This document shows positions 4,013 through 52,700 of a stretch of 64,000 nucleotides of DNA, piece by piece. This DNA comes from Phallusia mammillata. Taxonomy: Eukaryota. The notes under the pieces were generated by a model. The model did no database searches, had not been told where the DNA came from, and saw only the letters and a list, made by a program, of their open reading frames with translations. The stretch covers positions 12,958,001 through 13,022,000 of the forward strand of contig OZ281495.1 in the NCBI GenBank assembly GCA_965637545.1, given 5' to 3'. Both the position numbers and the translations under genes were made by a program. The first letter of the stretch is position 1; each line of letters starts with the position of its first letter.

Positions 4013-6921
4013 TTACGGGGTCATAAGCGAAACGCTAAACTGTATCACGAATGCGTGGTCTGTGTAATGACATGCAGGGCTTGTCGCTTTCGTCGAATAA
4101 ACCGTCGCTCTTGCAATACACGGTGGTGCCATGAGCATTGAATAAATCGATTGTCCGACCTGCGCACGGCTTCGCACGCGCTCGACAGATTGCTGAAAGC
4201 ATATATTACACTGACGTGTGAACAATTGGTTGGTCGTCGTCTGTCACAGCAGATGGACGGCGCATTTCCCTGTGACGATTTCCTTCCCTTGCGTTATCGT
4301 GACGCAGAATAATAAATGTCTATATCCTTTGAACGAGGGAGATTTACAGGTCAATAGGTAAATAACTGACACGCACAAAACACCCAGCGCTGGGTTTTTT
4401 CATACTCAAAACGACGGAGTTACCATCCGTGTAACTAACCAAGGGACATATGTTAGCCAGATCAAAAATGTTCCAAAATCTATCAATGATATAACCCGGG
4501 GCACAAGGAAGTTCGACATTTTACCCTGGAATGCCACAAAGAAACAACCGGCACATACCCAAAACGCTCTAGTCAAGGAAATTTCACTTTGGCAACCGAT
4601 TTACCTTTGTTCTAAACGTACATTTTAGCGTTTTAAAGCAGTAGTTCTCAACCAGTAATACGCGTACGGTACTACAGTGGTACGCCGGAATTTTTCATGT
4701 GGTACATGAGTAGCTTTCTGTCATAGTTAATTCAAGTCAGATCATGAAATGCAACTTAACTAACCCAATCAGCCTGGTTTAGCGAAACTTAAACATTTCG
4801 TTAGAATTGCTGGTGTCAGAAACATATGTGCTAGCTTAGTAAAGAAGAATCCGCCTAGCTCTTGGTCTATAGCAGTGGTTCTCAACCAGGGCCCATGTCT
4901 ATAGATTCACCATTAAACACTACTAAAACCCTTTTTCTTTTTTAATGCGCATGATTAAGTGTGTGTTGCAAATAACTTTATTCCCTAATTTATTTAACTA
5001 TTTCACACACTATTTGTCTATATTGAGGTTTTTCATGTCAACGGATACATATTCTTGTATACTCTATTCGACCCGTTCAAAGCCAAATTTAGTACCGAAT
5101 TCCAACACAGGTTGCCATTTTAATTTGTAAGGGGGCCACATGACTTACAGGGTTATTTGAAGGGGGCCATGAGGCTAAAAAGTTACTTTTAAGGGGCCAC
5201 CAAAAGTTGAGAACCACTGGTCTACACCCAAACAGGGTTTATGCGTTACGCAACGACAGAAAAGGTCGTCATGTGGTACGCGATTAGTATAAGGTTGAGA
5301 ACCACTGATTTAAAGGTATTGGAACTACCTGTAAATAACTTGGTACGAGCGTATGCCCTGTTGGGTGACATTTTCGATTTCACCGAAACTACGAAGATAT
5401 TCTATGGCTTGACGGAGGGAAATCATTTTGCTGATAAAGACGCGGACAGCTGATAAAGGAACTTGGATGCAGCGACTTCGTGTTCTTTGTTGCTCGACTT
5501 CGTCCAATAATTTCAGTTCTTTAAAAACGTGTGTATTTCGGCTGTAGTCTGTGTTCATCAACTTTCAATGCCATGTTTAACCTTTATACACTAAGTCTTG
5601 GGAAAACGCTGTGAGGCCTAAACAGCAAACTAAGCGTAACAACTAACAAATTACAGTGAACTTTGCGACCACACCAAGCTAATACATGATATAAAAGCAA
5701 CTACTATTTTTTGTTTTTTTGTTTCGCACCCGTTCGTTTGCAGTGTCGCGTCGCTAAATCAACAGATTTCATACACACCTCTTCGAGTGTGAAAAATCTG
5801 ACTTGGCTTCGGGGTTATATACATCATAGACTGTTGACCTTGGTGTTGTTCGAGGTCACGTTTACCAAGTATTTTCAGACGACCGGTGGGAAGAGAGTTC
5901 TAAACAAAAGAGAATTAAGCGCATTTTAAGAAATTTAAATTGAGGGTGTGTCATGTGGAAACATAGGACTCGAAATTGCCAGTTCGAAGGCAAAGTAATT
6001 TCCACGCATATTTGTTTCGCGTTCTGTGGAAATCTTATGAAACGCAGATTGTGTTAAACACAGGGAACATTGTTTGGGGCAGCACTACTTCGTGCGATCA
6101 TCAGGGCAAACTGGGTTTCCAAGGATAGGAAGTTGCTCTTAATAAACGTCGTTTACGACAAAAATTACAACACCGAAAATGTGTTCATTTGATTTGACAC
6201 TAACCCTCTACTTCCACCATGCGACTGATGAAAATTAGAGATGTACCAAAGTTTAAATAGGTCCATTTTTGTAAATACTGATCTGGCTTTTACTATTCGT
6301 TATTAGTCCATACTTATTTTACCATACAAGACAAAGGCGTTTCAGAGTTTCACTTTAGGAATTAACTTGACTTTTTTAAGTCGCGCCTTTACGTTCGAGC
6401 CAGTTTATGTCTGTATGTGGGTCAGACGTGCCGAACATTCGGTCAAATTGGTGAATAACTAACAAAAGATATCCCATCTAAGCAATTCTCGCCCCTGGCG
6501 ATCAATGTTTCTACTAGATAAGGAAAATCAAGGCCTGTGTTTTTCCCATCTTTAGACCTACCTTTGATGATTGAACTTTGTCTTCCGCTTCAAGAGCTTT
6601 GGAAACGGGATCAGGCAAGAACTTCGCCACCCGACAAAGTTTATTAAACTCATACCGAAAACCAGCAAACTTTCCAGATCTACACTTGGTCTGGAAATTG
6701 TCAGCTGTTATGCCTTGTTCTAGTCCGTACGCTTGAAACTGGAGATTGTCAAATGCTTTCGAGGTTGGACTATTTGTACGTTGCAGGCAGTATTCTGGAG
6801 AGTAGTTTCGTTTGTGCATCCATTGCTCTTGCTGGGACGAAGAAATCAATTGGTCTTGCTTGCTTCGTTCAAAGCCGTACGGTGTCACAACATTAATTAT
6901 GTTCTGAAGATCACGAGGCAT
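4013..6921 (-). CDS. Unidentified multi-exon protein-coding gene (exon chain not fully resolved)
   Basis: ORF 6921-6514 has an acceptor just before the ATG and a GTAGGT donor after ...VQSSK. Further open, splice-bounded segments lie near 6450, 6140, 5890, 5561-5325, 4540 and 4320. No family recognised. Confidence 0.3.
4639..5307. mobile_element. hAT-type MITE (outer element of a nested pair)
   Basis: TIR CAGTAGTTCTCAACC / GGTTGAGAACCACTG; TSD ttttaaag / atttaaag (7/8). Confidence 0.8.
4873..5219. mobile_element. hAT-type MITE nested inside the previous element
   Basis: TIR CAGTGGTTCTCAAC / GTTGAGAACCACTG; TSD gtctatag / gtctacac (6/8); internal GGGGGCCAC/T-type repeats. Confidence 0.8.
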
Positions 6922-32711: not shown

Positions 32712-35700
32712 CTTTGGCACGTCCACTTGGGTCATCTGCACATTTTATGTGGGTTTCATCATATTCCATACTATCGCCAGGACATCCAACAGAGTTTCGT
32801 CCCTTGCTGTTTACACATTTGCGGTATCGTATGCATTTCTTATTGTTTTCTTTCAGCATCCATGCTCCCCACGGCGACCATGTCACATTCACTGAGCGAG
32901 GGGTAAAGATGTGCAAATTGGACCACATGAAGCAATTTGAAACTTTGTTACTCGCAACCATAGGCGTCGATTTTTTAATTGTTTGCAAATTTTTTAGGGG
33001 TCAACCGCCAATTAAAAATATTTAGGCACCTAGTTAATGTTAGAAACGGCCCAAATAGTGGTTATATGTCATTCAAAGCATTTTAGTGCAGAGTTGCAAG
33101 CGGGCCCGAAATCTGAGCCCGAACCCGGCCCGAACCCGAAAGTATAAGCCCGAAGCCCGACCCGAACCCGAAACGTTTTTGAGAAGCCCGTTTAGGCCCG
33201 AAATTTTGATTGACAGGTCTATCCACGAAAGCCTTGCAACAAAGTATGAGAAAGAAAAAAAGAGAAAAGACAACAAACACAATGAACAATAGTAGACAAT
33301 GGGGTAAACAATACGTTTTAGACCAGGGTGGGCATTCGATCAAAGCGAGAGAATTGTTACTAAAAAATGACGGAAACGGAACGTAAAGTCAGGCCCGTTT
33401 TGAGCCCGTTTTCTGACAAATACCTAAGCCCGAACCCGGCCCGAACCCGGCCCGAACCCGGCCCGAACCCGAACCCGGCCCGAAAAGCCCGGCCCGACTT
33501 GCAACTCTGTTTTAGTGATCACTTAAAAACTCAGTACCAAACAAATTCTATAATGTAGGCTAAATAGCATATAGCTTCTAGGCCAAGCACGGATCCCCTT
33601 GTTGTCGTCTGGCCCATATCCTAAAACCCAAACAATTCGCATAATTTAACACAAATCTTATTACATAAACTCACGTCCATATCCCTCGCATTGGTATCGG
33701 CGATTAATAAGAACTTTGTCAGTTTCTTGCAAACCCGTAAAGAAATCATCTGGATTTTCGCCCCTGATTTTGAGGCCGCTTTTTCCTGATATTGTTGCCA
33801 CATCTTCTTTATTTGAAAAGGCGTTAAAGGCGAAATGCATGATCGATTTGGTGTTGTATTCAACCTCTAGGTCTAAAGCCTCTGCTGGACTCAGTTTGGT
33901 AAAAGCTCCTTCATAACCTGAGAATGATAGAAAACGGTCGATGGATATTAAAGCATAGTTGCTTGGTCACACTTCCCAGTAGACATTTAAACGCTTTTTG
34001 ACCACAAAATAGCCTTAACGTTTAATATGACGTGTCAGCGGCACAAAACTTCAAGTAGGTATTTCTTGTTTTAAAAATGCGTTCGGTTAGTATCATCTTT
34101 TTATAGCTGCTTGGACCTGTACCTGTTTGGCAATGTTAAATGTAAATGTGCCATAGGAATTTTGTATTTAACAGGACTTGTGCCACATAGACTTTGGCAA
34201 ACTAATTTGCAATTGATATTATTCAACAGGTGAAAAAACACCATTTAAAATAGTTTTTTCAAGCCTATTCGGTGGCAATTATGTCAATTTCGTTGTGAAA
34301 GCTTACCGGGTTGAATGTTGTTTTCGTGGATGGTGATGTAAGTGTCCCGATCTGGTCTGGTGTGCTCGTGGTGGAATCCCAACACATGCATTACAAGATG
34401 TTGGATAGCTGGTGCTCCCGTGCAAAGTTCCTCATTAATGTTGAGTACGTTTGTATCTGGGTTGCGGCCAAACGATGCGCTAAAATACAAACGTTAGGAT
34501 TAGACGCTTCACAGCAGTGGTTCTCATCTAGCTTTAGGCAAACGTGATCCAACTGCAGGCACAATATTTTTGTTGGCCCGCGAAAGACCAACGTTTGATT
34601 GACAACAATAAATTTTGTTTTCAATGTTTTAAAATGTGAGGATGAAATGATACGAAATACTGCAAAATCTCCTATTGCGACCCATGACAAGGCATTTTAT
34701 GTGTAGTAAAGGGTTCAGTGCTAGTATATACTAGATGTCTTTACTTCCACTATGTTCAATTGAAAACTTGAAACAGTAATGTGTCGCGAACTAAGAACCG
34801 AGCATCGTCATATGGTATTCGGTGGTACTGGGTATCGACGTTTGACAAATCTGCTGAACATAACATAACGATGGACAACGTTTAAGCAACGACTAGACAA
34901 CCGTTAATAATTTCTTGTCACAACTAGCTTTTGCATTGGTCAGAATCGGTAACATTTTGACATAACCCGTTCTTAGTCATTTTGCATCCAGAGCACAAAG
35001 AAGTAGCTTTTGTACTTGTTTTTTCTGACCACACGTTTTTACATAAGCTAATGTTAAGATAGCCTTAAAATATACGAATCCCGAGAGTTATCAACCGACC
35101 TGCATTTTGATGCGTTCTGTATGAGAATATGCTGCTCCTCGAACGTAACATCCACAAAGTCTAGGCAAGTTTCACGTGAAAACTCTGCCAATGCGCTTCG
35201 TACAAGTAGTTTAGAATCGTTGCCTGTCAAATAACAACGCGTTAGTGGATTTGTCATGCAAAGTTTACAGTTTTTTTACCAAATGTTGTAGCGAAGCGGA
35301 TGGGAATTCTGTGTCTCATTCCAATCTTGTTTTGATCCCAAATCTTATGAACTTCGAGCGTCTCAAGAACTTCAATGGAGTCTGATGTTCCATCAAACAT
35401 CTATAAATATAAAGACAAGTAGCAGAAGTGCTGTAGGCTGTAATTGGGTTGAAACAGTGCAGAAAAGCGTTTTCTTGTCCCAAACCAGTGTTTCCCAAAG
35501 TAAAGTGCGTGATACAAACGGGACTAGGATATTTTTTTTCGGGAGGACTAGCTCTCAACCATTGTTGTGATTTGCCCATCTCGTTTTTCTCTTATATAGG
35601 TAGTGGGAATTTTAGACTTTTTGAGCGGAAACGAAGCCAAATTCTTTTTTTTTAAATAACGTTTTTATATTACTAGATGAGGGACAAGAAGGATTTATTA

Positions 35701-37780
35701 AGTAATTATTTAGAGCATGGACAGAGAAAATAGGTAAACTCTGCGTTAAACTATATGTAAAACACAAAACTTTACAAAAACGACTGACTATCATCCAACC
35801 TTAAGGACAGTTTCAACTTCGTCGGATTGGAACTGAACATCTCCCTGGAAAGCTCCAGTTTCCTTGCATGTGCAATCTACAGGACATTCTTTATCATCTG
35901 TGCGAAATCCAAGCGGACACTGGTTCGAACACTTTCCGACCTTGAACTTGCAGTGACGAACTTGAGAATAAATTTTGGAATTAGAGGTCTGTGCCGTTTG
36001 CTGCGACAAGCCCTTGTAGTTTAGAAAAGGTTTTCGGAGCATGTTTTGTCTGCATGGTATGGATTTGAATTTGCGTGCGAGTAACGGGGTGCAAATACTG
36101 ATATAAAATACTGGTGCATACTTAAAAACAGGAAAACTAACTGGGCTGACTTCCCTGACTTCGGCGGCAGTGTTTCACAAAATATGTTTCCTTTTTTGTC
36201 AATTGGGAAAGGGTTAGAGCAGTGGTTCCCAAACATTTTTCTTTTAAGGCGCATTTTAGAAAAAACAAAAATTATTTGGCGCACTTCGAACATTTGAATA
36301 AAAATATATTTGAATTTTTTTATTTCAGTTTAAAATGGCACAGTAAATTAGCTGACAAAGGCACTAACTATGAGGTCATAAAGCCGATGTACAGGTCACT
36401 CTCATATTTAAATAGCCTAGTTGAACATCTCAGAGACGTGGAGCATGTTGGCCTAGTAGTCTAAACATAGTTTGGGAACCACTGGGTTAGAGTCAGGGTC
36501 AGAGTTTGGGTTAGGTTTGAATGACTTCATCATTCTGTGTCCGTAATGTTTTTACATTTAAAATACCCAGCTAAGTAGCTAGTTTTTGGCGTAAACCTCG
36601 ACATATAAGGTCTCGTCAGTGGAGCTGGTGACGAGAGATGGGCAGTTTTGACCATTTCAGCGATCCAACGGCACTTTACACTAGCCAATACGGATGATCT
36701 CTCGTAACCAGTTGCACTGATGAAACCGTTTAGGTCGAAACAGTGTGCACTGGCTGCAGTATAGAATGTATCGTTGTGGTAAATTGAAGGATATACATAC
36801 GCCCACAGAAATTGACTGCGACTGGGTCAGGTGCGACCTCCAACGGTACCCCTGTTCGAGCTGATTCGCTGATGTTTTTGCAAACTCCTCCAGGTGATGG
36901 TTGGTCTGTTTTAATATAATTGACAATGTTGAAACAAAAAAAGCAACCTATATGTTTGTGCTTTGAAAAAAAAAACGCCTAAAACAAACACACGTTTACC
37001 AAAATGTTCATATTTAGCCGATACGGCCTTTGTTCTATCGCCAGCTGCACTGATGAGACCTAATAGATCGAAACAGTGTTCAGCTTACTTGTTTTCATTT
37101 GGTTTGATACAATACCAAAACGCAGTGCACATGTGCAACAAAAAATGGCATGTACCAAACGTCAGGGAAAATGTTCTCAGCCTCTGGACTTTTAAAGCAC
37201 TTTTTAATGTATAGTTTTTTGCGAAACATGGAAAAACAACTACTTTCTAAAATTAGACATGGACTGAAATAAACACCAACCTATCACACATAAATGTGCA
37301 TTGTTACGCAATTACGAAAGAACAATGCGTGCACGACTTTCAAATGTAGCCTATACATTTTTAAATGCCTAAAGTTTTTATTTCTAAAAAAATGTACAGC
37401 CTATAAACTCACTTGCAATGGCTACTCCAATCAAAACACAACCAATTATTATGAGGCTTGCTCCGAACAGAAAGATTAGGACCTTTGTAGGTGGAACTCG
37501 TACAGAAGGAAATTTTATGGATTGAACTGAGATAAAAAAGTAGTATTTTATAATAATTTGTAGCTCAATTAAGGAAACAAGACGTACTTATACGCAACTG
37601 TGAAACTCTAATCCAAATTGAGCACAGTTTTCACATGAAAACAAACTAACCTTTGTTAGGTACAGAAGTACCAGAAGGTTTAGCTTCTTCTATTTCTGGA
37701 ACTGGAATTGAAGTAGAAGGTTTAACTTCTTCTATTTCCGGAACTGGAATTGAAGTATCCATCTTTCTATTTGTACAAAA
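32712..37780 (-). CDS. Astacin-like (M12A) protein with antistasin-like and TSP1-like modules, predicted catalytically inactive
   Basis: Exons 37780-37651, about 36905-36801, about 36042-35800 (CSNQCPLGFRTDDKECPVDCTC and pro-motif FQGDV), 35400-35280, 35223-35100, 34479-34307 (HLVMHVLGFHHEHTRPDRD), 33917-33675 (Met-turn SIMHF), 32891-32712 (TWSPWGAW...RYRKC). First exon and start codon not resolved. Confidence 0.8.
33089..33509. mobile_element. hAT-type MITE with subterminal GCCCGAACCCG repeats
   Basis: TIR CAGAGTTGCAAG / CTTGCAACTCTG; perfect TSD ttttagtg; clusters of CCCGAA/GGCCCG at both ends. Confidence 0.9.
36220..36484. mobile_element. hAT-type MITE
   Basis: TIR CAGTGGTTCCCAAAC / GTTTGGGAACCACTG; perfect TSD ggttagag. 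Confidence 0.9.
36596..36639 (-). ncRNA. Degenerate hammerhead-like motif (probably inactive)
   Basis: Minus strand reads CCAGCTCCA-CTGACGA-GACC-TTATAT-GTC-GAGG, with GAAA decayed to GAGG; forms a 30-nt inverted repeat (5 mismatches) with 36697-36726. Confidence 0.45.
36708..36753 (+). ncRNA. Minimal type I hammerhead ribozyme-like motif
   Basis: CCAGTTGCA-CTGATGA-AACC-GTTTA-GGTC-GAAA-CAGTG-TGCACTGG: core boxes present, stem I and 3-bp stem II pair; G10.1 is A and the cleavage triplet is GUG. Confidence 0.55.
37043..37085 (+). ncRNA. Minimal type I hammerhead ribozyme-like motif (second copy)
   Basis: AGCTGCA-CTGATGA-GACC-TAATA-GATC-GAAA-CAGTG-TTCAGCT: core intact, stem I 6/7 pairs, stem II 3/4 pairs, GUG triplet; core lies 333 bp downstream of the first copy. 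Confidence 0.55.
37673..37756 (-). repeat. 42-bp coding tandem repeat, 2 copies (TSIPVPEIEE[V/A]KPS)
   Basis: Units 37673-37714 and 37715-37756 differ at 2 positions; in frame within exon 37780-37651 of the astacin-like gene. Confidence 0.9.
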
Positions 37781-49700: not shown

Positions 49701-52700
49701 GCTTCACGACCATATTGTCTTTGGTCAGGGTCAAGTAGTAAGTATGCCCTGGCGGGGCGTTAGGGGGCTGCGGAACTACCTCGACCTCAACGGGGACGTC
49801 CCTTTCGTCACACTCCTCACACAGGTACGCCCGCTCGTCGTTGTAATCGTCAGGCAGAACTCCCATACAATCGCAATGCTGCCACACCTATATTGATTTA
49901 AAAGGAGACGTTTGCACAGATTACACTCATTGCAGTATAGTGCCTGTATTGAGCTATGATTTAAAACTTACCAAACTTACAAAGTCCTGTTTATAAGGAC
50001 ATCTAGCGGTAGCGTAATTAAATAATCAAAATAACAACTTTAGTAATAGATCAAAACCATCAACAGCATGGCTTAACCTGACGATCACTGTTTGCCTTTT
50101 TAACTAGAGTAGAGTAAAACCCATGAACGATAAAATCCTTGGAAAAACAGAATCAGTCGGTTTAATAAAGGAATATATATTTCGCCTGTGTGGCATCATC
50201 AGTTCCTGTAATCGAAATACAAATCGATAAAAATGAGTGCTAAAACAAACACGCTAAAATGAATAAAATAAAATAAAAGCAGTAAAACAGTATAACAAAG
50301 AAACACAGGGGATGCTAGTACTAATTGCCAAAGCTAACTGAACCAACCTCAAACTAAAACAAAACAAAACAAGCACAACTGTGGGCACCGGACCGAGCGA
50401 GAAAAAATAAAGATAAGACGCAAAAGGTAGAACAGGTACGCGCATGCAGAGAGATAACACCAGCGGTGAGTGCCGAGGGAGTTTTTACCGTACTCGAGGC
50501 AGGACCATTTCTTGAATATTTATTTTGGCGTCTAATATCCTTTGCCATTTGGCCTCGCACATGTCTAAATTTTCTTTTTTAGGGCTTTCCACAAAGGTAA
50601 TGCAATAACAAGTTGCGATGTCGGGTTTCCTTTTCAAAATATTAATGTGTTTGCTTGCGTAATGTCGCAGTAATGCTGCTTTGTCATTCTTTTCTGTGTA
50701 ATTAAATGTTTTCCAAGTCGCTCTGTGTCCGCGCCATCGTACAGAAAACGGGTTCTTGGTCTGGCCAACATAGCAAGCATTGCATTCATTGCAATTAGCT
50801 ACATAAATACCGTAGTCGCGACAACTGAGGTTTTGTATGAGACGGACTTCACCAGCGGGCGTGTAGATTGTGGTGGTATCGGGCACCATTGATTTAAACT
50901 TGCTGTAATGCCCACAAAGGNNNNNNNNNNNNNNNNNNNNNNNNNNNNNNNNNNNNNNNNNNNNNNNNNNNNNNNNNNNNNNNNNNNNNNNNNNNNNNNN
51001 NNNNNNNNNNNNNNNNNNNNNNNNNNNNNNNNNNNNNNNNNNNNNNNNNNNNNNNNNNNNNNNNNNNNNNNNNNNNNNNNNNNNNNNNNNNNNNNNNNNN
51101 NNNNNNNNNNNNNNNNNNNNATTTTAAGGTTGTTTGTTACAAGATTTTTCGGAAAGTGGGACCGAATACATTTCTGCTGCAGTCTTTCCAAGCTGGTATT
51201 ATAGAGCTCGTCATTTTCGTTCAGTCTTCGCAATCTCCTCGCCTCCCCAACAACAATTGACTTGAATATGTTAAGCGGATGATGTGACGTTCCGTGTAAA
51301 AAAGCCGAACAAACAATACCACAAGACTTGTTTGGCCAACTGTTTTCCCTAAGTCCCTAAAGGTGTCAGGAAAGGAAAGAAACCTGCAACCCAATGCGTG
51401 CGTGGTTTACAAACGGCCAGCTACACTTGGACGAATATTAACCAAGTACAGGCGCATTGCGTTTGAAGATAGAGACTCGAATACAGCAGGGAAGTCCCAT
51501 CCATGTAATCACTGCGGCCTTTGTGGGCATTACAGCAAGTTTAAATCAATGGTGCCCGATACCACCACAATCATCACGCCCGCTGGTGAAGTCCGTCTCA
51601 TACAAAACCTCAGTTGTCGCGACTACGGTATTTATGTAGCTAATTGCAATGAATGCAATGCTTGCTATGTTGGCCAAACCAAGAACCCGTTTTCTGTACG
51701 ATGGCGCGGACACAGAGCGACTTGGAAAACATTTAATTACACAGAAAAGAATGACAAAGCAGCATTACTGCGACATTACGCAAGCAAACACATTAATATT
51801 TTGAAAAGGAAACCCGACATCGCAACTTGTTATTGCATTACCTTTGTGGAAAGCCCTAAAAAAGAAAATTTAGACATGTGCGAGGCCAAATGGCAAAGGA
51901 TATTAGACGCCAAAATAAATATTCAAGAAATGGTCCTGCCTCGAGTACGGTAAAAACTCCCTCGGCACTCACCGCTGGTGTTATCTCCCTGCATGCGCGT
52001 ACCTGTTCTACCTTTTGCGTCTTATCTTTATTTTTTCTCCCTCGGTCCGGTGCCCACAGTTGTGCTTGTTTTGTTTTGTTTTAGTTTGAGGTTGGTTCAG
52101 TTAGCTTTGGCAATTAGTACTAGCATCCCCTGTGTTTCTTTGTTATACTGTTTTACTGCTTTTATTTTATTTTATTCATTTTAGCGTGTTTGTTTTAGCA
52201 CTCATTTTTATCGATTTGTATTTCGATTACAGGAACTGATGATGCCACACAGGCGAAATATATATTCCTTTATTAAACCGACTGATTCTGTTTTTCCAAG
52301 GATTTTATCGTTCATGGGTTTTACTCTACCGTAATTAAATAAGGTACGGTATATATTTAAAAGGTGGTTTTCCAACAAACCACTTACAAAACAACTAATC
52401 ACTTCCTGAATATAGACTGCTTGTATTTGGGACTTGACATCTACTGTATGAAGTAGGTATTCACACATATTTTCACGATACTAGCGGTGAGTTTCCTGAC
52501 TGTCAGAGGTTGCTAATTTGCATGGTATTTTACAAAGTAAAGACTTATTGGGAAAAACCCGAGTTGTGGTGGCCTCAACTTACATAGCATTTCTCGCATT
52601 GTATCATTACTCCTTCATCCTTGTAAATTCCACAGATGCAACGGATGAAGTCGCCGTTCTTCCTTCTTTCAACCATCTCGGCTCGTTCAGCCTCCTGATC

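What the first reader, a model, noticed from the sequence alone, without database searches (positions are those of the whole stretch)
36596..37085. Trio of divergent hammerhead-like motifs with a GUG cleavage triplet in astacin-gene introns
Seen: two plus-strand motifs 333 bp apart share TAGCCRATACGG...CCAGYTGCA-CTGATGA-RACC-N5-GRTC-GAAACAGTG-T(G/T)CA, with differing stem II loops and a stem I C-G pair in copy 2 where copy 1 has an unpaired U. A third, decayed copy lies inverted 57 nt upstream of copy 1 and could pair with it over about 30 nt. They are unrelated in sequence to the Penelope hammerheads at 50-52 kb, and no RT/EN remnant is nearby. Established: minimal type I hammerheads with tiny stem III mark Penelope-like elements and retrozymes and can cleave as dimers; G at position 17 normally blocks cleavage. 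Both intact copies have G17 and a 5-nt ACAGU stem III. Inference: a second, uncharacterised non-autonomous ribozyme-bearing family, either a GUG variant or a dead lineage that still spread. A host exon (about 36905-36801) lies between the two copies.
Basis: partly seen in the sequence, partly recalled or inferred. Interest (0 to 1): 0.75.

Follow-up and report, generated by a model that had tools for sequence, protein, structure and literature searches.

The report
Decayed relics of a hammerhead retrozyme
The three hammerhead-like motifs are worn-out, shortened copies of an abundant 282-base self-cutting retroelement (a "retrozyme", a kind already described in animals) whose intact copies carry an ordinary hammerhead with the normal GUC cut site, so the odd "GUG" ribozyme is a misreading of damaged copies.

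Summary
The three motifs are real and far beyond chance, but the structural reading is wrong. They are 5'-truncated, 9-17% diverged fragments (unit positions about 189-282) of a young 282-nt repeat with more than 600 copies in this genome. The repeat occurs dispersed and in tandem arrays.

The family consensus is a textbook type I hammerhead. Stem I has 7 bp, stem II 4-5 bp, and stem III 5 bp (ACAGU/ACUGU, loop GUGC), with an A15.1-U16.1 pair and a GUC cut site.
- Copy 1 keeps the whole stem III hairpin but carries G10.1A and U16.1G.
- Copy 2 lost the 3' strand of stem III and the cut site through a 9-nt deletion that occurs nowhere else in the genome.
- Copy 3 is truncated and forms a head-to-head doublet with copy 1.

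"G17 with a tiny stem III" came from aligning only what two damaged copies still share.

Family insertions have 10-15 bp target duplications, heavy 5' truncation and head-to-head doublets. They also carry a roughly 30-nt tail at one end only. These are the published scars of Penelope-like element integration, and intact Penelope ORFs are abundant here.

Verdict: dead relics of a non-LTR retrozyme, a known kind. Other notes of this scan reported retrozyme-like hammerhead repeats on other DNA of this genome. The RNA evidence is only suggestive.

The parts
36598..36675 (-). Copy 3: a decayed arm covering unit positions 189-266. It has CUGACGA instead of CUGAUGA and lacks GAAA, stem III and the cut site. 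It is the left arm of a head-to-head doublet with copy 1.
   Evidence: BLAST to the 282-nt unit gives 83% over 78 nt, E 3e-18. Alignments. Its fold is not a hammerhead.
36677..36759 (+). Copy 1: unit positions 205-282 plus the short tail TGCAG (36755-36759). It is a full-length hammerhead with two inactivating changes, G10.1 to A (36724) and U16.1 to G (36753). C17 is at 36754.
   Evidence: BLAST gives 91% over 76 nt, E 2e-25. Alignment to the consensus. The minimum-energy fold is an alternative hairpin, not the three-way junction.
37005..37112 (+). Copy 2: a separate solo insertion covering about unit positions 196-282 plus a decayed long tail. A 9-nt deletion at about 37079/37080 removes the 3' strand of stem III, U16.1 and C17. 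Stem II has a C-A mismatch.
   Evidence: BLAST gives 83%, E 5e-15. Alignments. This junction is unique in the genome.
36997..37004 (.). Candidate target-site duplication of copy 2 (TACCAAAA), left copy. The right copy is at 37113-37120.
   Evidence: An exact 8-nt match flanks the insertion. In shuffled flank pairs, matches of 8 nt or more occur in about 3%, so support is modest.
36598..36738 (.). Inverted repeat made by the doublet: arms 36598-36650 and 36686-36738, 53 nt, 75% complementary, 35 nt apart.
   Evidence: As minus-strand RNA the region folds into a long imperfect hairpin, -58.8 kcal/mol, z -4.1.
36801..36905 (-). Context only: a putative host exon between the doublet and copy 2. 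It is unverified and not part of the element.
   Evidence: AG precedes it and GTATGT follows it on the minus strand, and two frames are open. It has no similarity to the repeat unit. The astacin catalytic-domain exons lie at 33.66-34.5 kb on the minus strand.

Best explanation
The trio consists of two old insertions of a non-autonomous, non-coding 282-nt retroelement of the animal 'non-LTR retrozyme' kind: one head-to-head doublet (copy 3 plus copy 1) and one solo copy (copy 2).

In live family members, each unit carries a canonical type I hammerhead that would cut after GUC, once per unit. By analogy with published retrozymes, transcripts of tandem copies self-cleave to 282-nt monomers. A host RNA ligase circularises these, and a reverse transcriptase supplied in trans copies them back into DNA.

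The integration scars of this family match those of Penelope-like elements, so a Penelope RT/GIY-YIG endonuclease is the most likely mobiliser:
- 10-15 bp target duplications
- strong 5' truncation
- head-to-head 5'-truncated doublets that meet at palindromes
- a roughly 30-nt tail at one end only

Inserted copies run through the cut site into a 5-10 nt or 35-45 nt tail. The template was therefore uncleaved or re-ligated (circular) RNA, not a cleaved linear monomer.

The window copies are about 85-nt 3' fragments that have since decayed. Copies 1 and 2 are antisense to the neighbouring astacin gene, and none of the three can form an active hammerhead.

Shown: family membership, the consensus structure, copy numbers and the insertion anatomy. 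Inferred: self-cleavage, circularisation and Penelope-mediated mobilisation.
For: Abundance and arrangement of the family:
- A DNA search of the own genome gives 1085 first-look candidates, many about 90% identical to copy 1, including a tandem array.
- Tandem Repeats Finder reports period 282, 4.3 copies, 98% matches.
- The array reads ...CCAGCUGCA-CUGAUGA-GACC-UUAUA-GGUC-GAAA-CAGUGUGCACUGUC/UGCAGCU.
- 470 exact canonical cores and 627 copies with an intact 3' half are present; 94 of the first 100 listed have GUC.

Structure and coding:
- The minimum-energy fold of the consensus is exactly the hammerhead three-way junction with C17 unpaired.
- Rfam gives Hammerhead_1 at 25.5 bits, E 0.0016.
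- The unit has no open frame longer than 53 aa and is 48.9% GC.

Window copies: they match only unit positions 189-282 and carry private lesions.

Insertion anatomy in 55 independent loci:
- 31 single arms, 23 head-to-head doublets and 0 tail-to-tail doublets.
- In 18 of 23 doublets one arm has a short tail and the other a long tail.
- Exact flank matches of 10 bp or more occur in 28 of 60 loci against 1 of 1178 shuffled pairs; examples are.
- Arm ends cluster at unit positions 5-10 and 35-45.

Published Penelope hallmarks match:
- 5' truncation, partial tandems, an adjacent inverted truncated copy and a 30-40 bp tail at one end (PMC8557442).
- 8-10 bp target duplications, a 31-bp tail, palindromes at the inverted junctions, and pseudo-LTRs sufficient for integration in trans (PMC3846280).

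Possible mobilisers: the Penelope endonuclease of the window has at least 150 scored relatives in this genome, in several families, with open frames up to about 980 aa.

Published class description.
Against: - No cleavage or circular RNA was shown here. The available runs were contigs only and their RNA status is a guess.
- Rfam scores stay below the gathering cut-off of 34 bits.
- The copies are too uniform for a covariation test: only 18 distinct sequences among 48 full hammerheads.
- The hammerhead is canonical, whereas Penelope pseudo-LTR hammerheads, including the one at 52.2 kb of this window, are minimal.
- No autonomous Penelope copy sharing sequence with the unit was found. None lies next to the listed copies, and further genome fetching was closed.
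- No target duplication could be found for the copy 3/copy 1 doublet, so its origin in a single event rests on analogy with the family.
Confidence: 0.85

Rival explanations
1. One reading: a distinct lineage of minimal type I hammerheads with a GUG triplet (G17) and a tiny stem III. It is either a working variant or a dead lineage that still spread.
For: Copies 1 and 2 share GAAACAGUGU, so a G17 register can be drawn. Rfam aligns copy 2 to Hammerhead_1 in that register at 16 bits, E 1.4.
Against: - The family consensus and 94% of the sampled copies have a 5-bp stem III and GUC.
- Copy 1 contains the complete stem III hairpin.
- The copy-2 junction is unique to the window.
- GUG occurs in 1 of the 100 listed copies.
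Confidence: 0.02
2. The family is a foldback or MITE-type DNA transposon whose terminal inverted repeats happen to contain a hammerhead. The doublets would be the whole element.
For: Twenty-three of 55 insertions are inverted doublets flanked by direct duplications.
Against: - The inner ends of the arms vary from unit position 1 to 262.
- The two arms are unequal and end at different tail positions.
- 31 of 55 insertions are single arms, many with their own target duplication.
- Some arms exceed one unit, and tandem arrays exist.
- Duplication length varies from 10 to 15 bp.
DNA transposons give fixed termini and a fixed duplication length.
Confidence: 0.04
3. The copies are solo pseudo-LTRs or 3' ends of an autonomous Penelope-like element family that carries this hammerhead, not an independent non-coding retrozyme.
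For: The insertion scars are Penelope-type. Most Penelope insertions are 5'-truncated to the terminal repeat. Many Penelope families exist in this genome.
Against: - None of the 98 fetched loci (216 kb) around copies holds a Penelope endonuclease.
- Arrays are pure 282-nt units with nothing between them.
- No listed Penelope endonuclease hit sits just upstream of a listed copy on the same strand.
- Known Penelope hammerheads are minimal, and this one is canonical.
Confidence: 0.09

Closest known systems
Animal non-LTR retrozymes (Cervera and de la Pena 2020, PMC7229834; Li, Clavereau and Pollet 2026, bioRxiv 10.64898/2026.07.22.740005)
   Same: - Canonical type I hammerhead once per unit
- Non-coding unit of a few hundred bp (published range 150-450; here 282)
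- Tandem arrays plus dispersed monomers
- GC below 50%
- Target duplications longer than 4 bp
- Co-occurrence with Penelope-like elements
- Hundreds to thousands of copies
   Different: - Circular RNA and cleavage were not shown here.
- The head-to-head doublets, the one-sided roughly 30-nt tail and the 10-15 bp duplications documented here do not appear in text searches of those two papers.
- I could not tell whether this particular family has been published, because the organism is coded and the supplements hold no sequences.
Penelope-like elements and their pseudo-LTRs (Arkhipova 2013, PMC3846280; Craig et al. 2021, PMC8557442)
   Same: - Frequent 5' truncation and partial tandems
- An adjacent inverted 5'-truncated copy
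- A 30-40 bp tail at one end only
- Short target duplications
- Palindromes at the inverted junction
- A hammerhead a few tens of nt upstream of the 3' end
   Different: - No RT/EN ORF.
- The hammerhead is canonical with a 5-bp stem III, not the minimal variant that acts as a dimer.
- No sequence similarity to the Penelope copy in this window.
Rfam Hammerhead_1 (RF00163), with other type I hammerhead-bearing repeats (Schistosoma Sm-alpha, newt satellite 2) recalled from general knowledge
   Same: Same core (CUGAUGA...GAAA...GUC) and the same type I topology inside a repeated element.
   Different: The consensus scores 25.5 bits against a gathering score of 34, and window copy 2 scores 16 bits. 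I made no sequence comparison with Sm-alpha or newt satellite 2, so any difference in repeat sequence is presumed, not tested.

Membership tests
Hammerhead ribozyme, type I | Conserved core: C3 U4 G5 A6 N7 G8 A9, G12 A13 A14, and the G10.1-C11.1 pair | tested here: met
   Met by the family consensus. In the window, copy 1 has A10.1 and copy 3 has CUGACGA and lacks GAAA.
Hammerhead ribozyme, type I | Three helices around the core, with stem I open and stems II and III closed by loops | tested here: met
   The minimum-energy fold of the consensus gives stem I 7 bp, stem II 5 bp and stem III 5 bp. The window copies do not fold this way.
Hammerhead ribozyme, type I | A15.1-U16.1 pair and a non-G base at position 17 | tested here: met
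   The consensus has GUC; 94 of the 100 listed copies have UC and 2 have UA. This is NOT met by the window copies. Copy 1 has G16.1, copy 2 has the site deleted, and copy 3 is truncated.
Hammerhead ribozyme, type I | Score at or above the Rfam gathering cut-off | tested here: not met
   No hit in the window at gathering. Copy 2 scores 16 bits and the consensus array 25.5 bits against 34. A whole-genome family search scored only 73 of 32475 candidates and was uninformative.
Hammerhead ribozyme, type I | Site-specific self-cleavage | not testable with these tools
   This needs in vitro transcription. The runs held only contigs, so RNA ends could not be seen.
Animal non-LTR retrozyme | Type I hammerhead inside short (150-450 bp) tandem repeats, plus dispersed copies | tested here: met
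   282-nt unit with 4.3 tandem copies, dimers and partial tandems, and more than 600 dispersed copies.
Animal non-LTR retrozyme | Non-coding, no LTRs, GC below 50%, target duplications longer than 4 bp | tested here: met
   Longest open frame 53 aa and GC 48.9%. Target duplications are 10-15 bp. PBS and PPT motifs were not searched for.
Animal non-LTR retrozyme | [quoted passage not shown] | tested here: inconclusive
   Contigs of 14 small runs guessed to be RNA hold 27-81% of the unit's words. In three of these runs that were laid (X1, X4, X6), pieces of the unit are present and the single-copy flanks are absent. Neither ends, junctions nor RNA status could be shown.
Penelope-like element (non-autonomous derivative) | Integration scars: 5' truncation, partial tandems, an adjacent inverted truncated copy, a 30-40 bp tail at one end, short target duplications | tested here: met
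   compared with the published descriptions.
Penelope-like element (non-autonomous derivative) | Sequence relationship to the pseudo-LTR or 3' end of an autonomous Penelope element in the same genome | tested here: inconclusive
   No similarity to the window's Penelope copy.
Penelope-like element (autonomous) | ORF with RT and GIY-YIG endonuclease | tested here: not met
   The unit has no ORF, and there is no endonuclease hit in any of the 98 loci or near the finding.

The most novel reading that the evidence does not exclude
The insertion scars of this family would be direct structural evidence that animal retrozymes with canonical hammerheads are integrated by Penelope RT/EN. Published support so far rests on co-occurrence and sequence similarity. 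The scars are:
- 10-15 bp target duplications
- exclusively head-to-head doublets joined at palindromes
- a roughly 30-nt tail on one arm only
- arms that run through the ribozyme cut site and sometimes exceed one unit

They would also indicate that the template is a circular or uncleaved RNA primed at two fixed positions, about 8 nt and about 39 nt downstream of the cut site.
Probability: 0.55. Interest if true: 0.55.

Novelty: new member of a known kind. Interest (0 to 1): 0.3.

Why it matters
For the window itself it matters little. The motifs are dead transposon debris near an astacin-like gene, and there is no new ribozyme chemistry such as G17 cleavage.

For the family there is more value. 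This genome offers a young, homogeneous retrozyme, with many copies 98-100% identical and clean insertion boundaries, alongside many intact Penelope ORFs. That makes it a good system for testing who mobilises animal retrozymes and from which RNA form, a question the literature still treats as a hypothesis.

Tried and rejected
- Rfam at gathering on the window gave nothing. A whole-genome RF00163 search was uninformative because only 73 of 32475 candidates were scored and the controls were silent.
- The second genomic match to the copy-2 junction (L032) is an unrelated chance 17-mer.
- The two GGC copies on C1 (L034) are one old copy inside a 4.7-kb segmental duplication, not a subfamily shared with copy 1.
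- Two pairs of copies 2-4.7 kb apart were checked as possible pseudo-LTRs around an ORF. No ORF of 120 aa or more lies between them.
- Covariation and covariance-model building were dropped. Only 18 distinct hammerhead sequences exist among 48 full copies, so a model would be a mere sequence profile. A fuzzy-regex scan timed out.
- I looked for arm starts exactly at the cut site as a footprint of in vivo cleavage. A few arms start at unit positions 1-7, but CTGCAG at the site is itself a palindrome and junction hot spot, so this is not evidence of cleavage.
I did not try to get the letters another way.
- The reads tool returned only contigs, with no RNA ends or circular junctions.
- The supplement of PMC7229834 holds no searchable sequences for comparison.
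- No target duplication was found for the copy 3/copy 1 doublet.
Full report
**1. The observation**

- Two plus-strand motifs with CTGATGA...GAAAC lie at 36717-36741 and 37050-37074, 333 bp apart.
- They sit within about 75 nt of shared sequence that begins TAGCCRATACGG.
- The joint pattern is not found in any of 100 shuffles of the window.
- A third copy lies inverted directly upstream of copy 1, at 36598-36675 on the minus strand.
- Together these two give a 53-nt inverted repeat that is 75% complementary.
- Rfam finds nothing at gathering threshold in the whole window. At a permissive threshold, only copy 2 aligns to Hammerhead_1, at 16 bits and E 1.4.

**2. What the copies belong to**

- A search of the window's own 240-Mb genome with copy 1 gave 1085 first-look candidates and dozens of hits at about 90% identity. 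These include four hits spaced exactly 282 bp apart.
- That locus is a tandem array with period 282, 4.3 copies and 98% matches.
- Read on the ribozyme strand, each unit ends ...CCAGCUGCA CUGAUGA GACC UUAUA GGUC GAAA CAGU GUGC ACUG UC, followed by UGCAGCU of the next unit.
- This is a complete, canonical type I hammerhead. It has the G10.1-C11.1 pair, a stem III of A15.1-C-A-G-U paired with A-C-U-G-U16.1 and closed by GUGC, C17, and a 7-bp stem I.
- The minimum-energy fold of this 71-nt stretch is exactly that three-way junction with C17 unpaired.
- Genome-wide, 470 copies carry the exact core through GUC.
- 627 copies carry the 3' half with any two bases at positions 16.1 and 17. Of the first 100 listed by position, 94 read UC, 2 UA, 2 GC, 1 CC and 1 UG.
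- Rfam scores the consensus at 25.5 bits (Hammerhead_1, E 0.0016) or 21.5 bits (Hammerhead_3), below the gathering scores. Membership therefore rests on the explicit core and helix check, not on Rfam.

**3.

- The window holds only the last third of the unit: copy 3 is unit positions 189-266 (83%), copy 1 is 205-280 (91%) and copy 2 is 210-277 (83%).
- Aligned to the consensus, copy 1 keeps the whole stem III hairpin and C17. It has U16.1 changed to G (36753) and G10.1 changed to A (36724).
- Copy 2 has a 9-nt deletion plus one substitution. This removes the 3' strand of stem III, U16.1 and C17, and fuses GAAACAGUGU to the remnant of stem I.
- Copy 3 ends inside stem II and its core reads CUGACGA.
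- The copy-2 junction occurs nowhere else in the genome except for one unrelated 17-mer. It is a private lesion, not a lineage.
- The sequence between copies 1 and 2 is unrelated to the unit, so 333 bp is not a repeat length.

**4. Anatomy of the family**

- The unit is 282 nt from cut site to cut site. It is 48.9% GC and has no open frame above 53 aa, even when read as a circle.
- It folds somewhat better than shuffles: -100 kcal/mol, z -2.6.
- I fetched 60 loci in chromosomal order, conditioned only on an intact 24-mer around the cut site, and annotated the arms by BLAST.

After collapsing segmental duplicates, 55 independent insertions remain.
- There are 31 single arms, 23 head-to-head doublets (5' ends facing each other), one other arrangement and no tail-to-tail doublets.
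- Arm 5' starts are spread from unit position 1 to 262 and pile up in the last 100 nt. There is an excess near a palindrome, TGGCTACACTAGCCA, at unit positions 201-215.
- Arm 3' ends fall into two sharp classes: 5-10 nt past the cut site (short tail, TGCAG...) and 35-45 nt past it (long tail, mostly ending ...TTTTACATT).
- In 18 of 23 doublets one arm has the short tail and the other the long one.
- Exact direct repeats of 10-15 bp flank the whole insertion in 28 of 60 loci, against 1 of 1178 shuffled flank pairs.
- Five of 80 arms are longer than one unit.
- Copies are very similar to each other: many are 98-100% identical and there are only 18 distinct hammerhead sequences among 48. The family is therefore young, and covariation cannot be assessed.

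**5. Mechanism**

These scars are those published for Penelope-like elements.
- Craig et al. 2021 describe frequent 5' truncation, partial tandems, an adjacent inverted 5'-truncated copy and a 30-40 bp tail at only one end (PMC8557442).
- Arkhipova et al. 2013 describe 8-10 bp target duplications, a 31-bp optional tail on one inverted pseudo-LTR, palindromes at inverted junctions (read as self-priming) and pseudo-LTRs sufficient for integration in trans (PMC3846280).
- The scars differ from L1 twin priming, as I know it from general knowledge. Here both arms carry the 3' terminal region and there is no poly(A).

Potential mobilisers are present. The genome holds many Penelope families, with at least 150 scored endonuclease matches at 44-99% identity to the window's copy and open frames up to about 980 aa.

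Because inserted arms run through the ribozyme cut site into a tail, the template was not a cleaved linear monomer. It was either an uncleaved multimer or a re-ligated circle. Arms longer than a unit fit rolling-circle copying. This is inference.

The life cycle itself is taken from the retrozyme literature (PMC7229834; bioRxiv 10.64898/2026.07.22.740005). It comprises transcription, self-cleavage, ligation to a 282-nt circle and reverse transcription in trans. It was not tested here.

RNA evidence is weak. Fourteen small runs of the same organism, guessed to be RNA, hold 27-81% of the unit's words. In three of them that were laid, contigs cover parts of the unit but not the single-copy flanks. 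Only contigs were available, so no ends, strand or junctions could be read. In a large run whose kind is not on record and which I take to be DNA from its size, summed contig depth over the hammerhead part is thousands of times that of the flank and higher than over the 5' part of the unit. This agrees with high copy number and 5' truncation, although the tool warns that this figure is not a copy number.

**6. The window copies in this light**

- Copy 3 plus copy 1 have the standard head-to-head doublet layout. The arms abut at unit positions 189 and 205, next to the palindrome, and copy 1 ends with the short tail TGCAG.
- The outer part of copy 3 is too decayed to show its tail or a target duplication.
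- Copy 2 is a separate solo insertion (about 37005-37112) with a decayed long tail and a candidate 8-bp duplication, TACCAAAA.
- At 9-17% divergence they are older than most of the family.
- The astacin-like catalytic exons lie on the minus strand at 33.66-34.5 kb. Copies 1 and 2 are therefore antisense to that gene, and only the truncated copy 3 is in sense. No ribozyme can act on the host transcript.
- In a minus-strand transcript the doublet would form a long imperfect hairpin, z -4.1.
- The proposed exon at 36801-36905 has plausible splice signals and two open frames, but I could not verify it.
- No Penelope endonuclease remnant lies near the finding.
- The Penelope doublet at 50.0-52.3 kb has an unrelated, minimal hammerhead. 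Its centre is masked with N, which I left untouched.

**7. Comparison, novelty and verdict**

The family meets the descriptive criteria of animal non-LTR retrozymes. It also carries Penelope-type integration scars, while lacking a Penelope ORF and the minimal Penelope hammerhead. The kind is known.

I could not determine whether this particular family has been published, because the organism is coded and the supplement holds no sequences.

Text searches of the two retrozyme papers found no description of inverted doublets, tails or target-site lengths for animal retrozymes. The insertion anatomy may therefore add structural support to the Penelope hypothesis.

Other notes of this scan report retrozyme-like hammerhead repeats elsewhere in this genome. 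I did not check whether they are the same family.

The finding as stated, a GUG-variant hammerhead, is not supported. What is there is ordinary: dead relics of a known kind of element.

Noticed in passing
window 50013-52342: Head-to-head Penelope-like doublet with GIY-YIG endonuclease coding remnants (51363-51953 plus strand, and mirrored at 50488-50919). Each outer end has a minimal hammerhead, for example CTGATGATGCCACACAGGCGAAATATATATTCC at about 52236-52268. The centre, 50922-51120, is masked N and was left untouched.
   Followed up: partly
window 33664-34493, minus strand: Astacin-like exons in which the zinc motif reads HLVMHVLGFHHEHTRPDRD, with Leu where the catalytic Glu is expected, and the Met-turn reads SIMHF instead of SIMHY. 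This agrees with the scan's note of a pseudo-protease.
   Followed up: no
G000:C2:6969823-7037317 (places listed): Six copies of a hammerhead variant (CTGATGATACC...) lie on the same strand, spaced 8.5-16 kb apart. This looks like a tandem segmental duplication that carried one insertion along. A Penelope endonuclease hit lies about 700 nt from the last copy, on the opposite strand.
   Followed up: no
L041, L042, L043, L088 and L049, L050, L051: Two groups of loci have identical short arms and identical flanking duplications (AGGTATAATGT and ACATTTCATGTTTA). These retrozyme fragments were copied passively inside larger repeats or segmental duplications. Two of them lie the same 29.6 kb from Penelope endonuclease hits.
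   Followed up: partly
L009:2064-2196: The inverted junction at one end of the 282-nt array gives sub-threshold Rfam microRNA hits (mir-759 at 37 bits, mir-210 at 32 bits). I read these as an artefact of the palindromic head-to-head junction rather than microRNA genes.
   Followed up: no
L009:2016-2045: One unit of the array carries a 15-nt internal duplication (CAGTGTCACAGTATC, two copies), making it 297 nt.
   Followed up: no
L014:844-1112 and L034:769-1130, 5455-5816: Older subfamily copies of the same unit, 78% and 90% identical. The L034 pair sits in a 4.7-kb segmental duplication and independently carries the U16.1-to-G change seen in window copy 1.
   Followed up: partly
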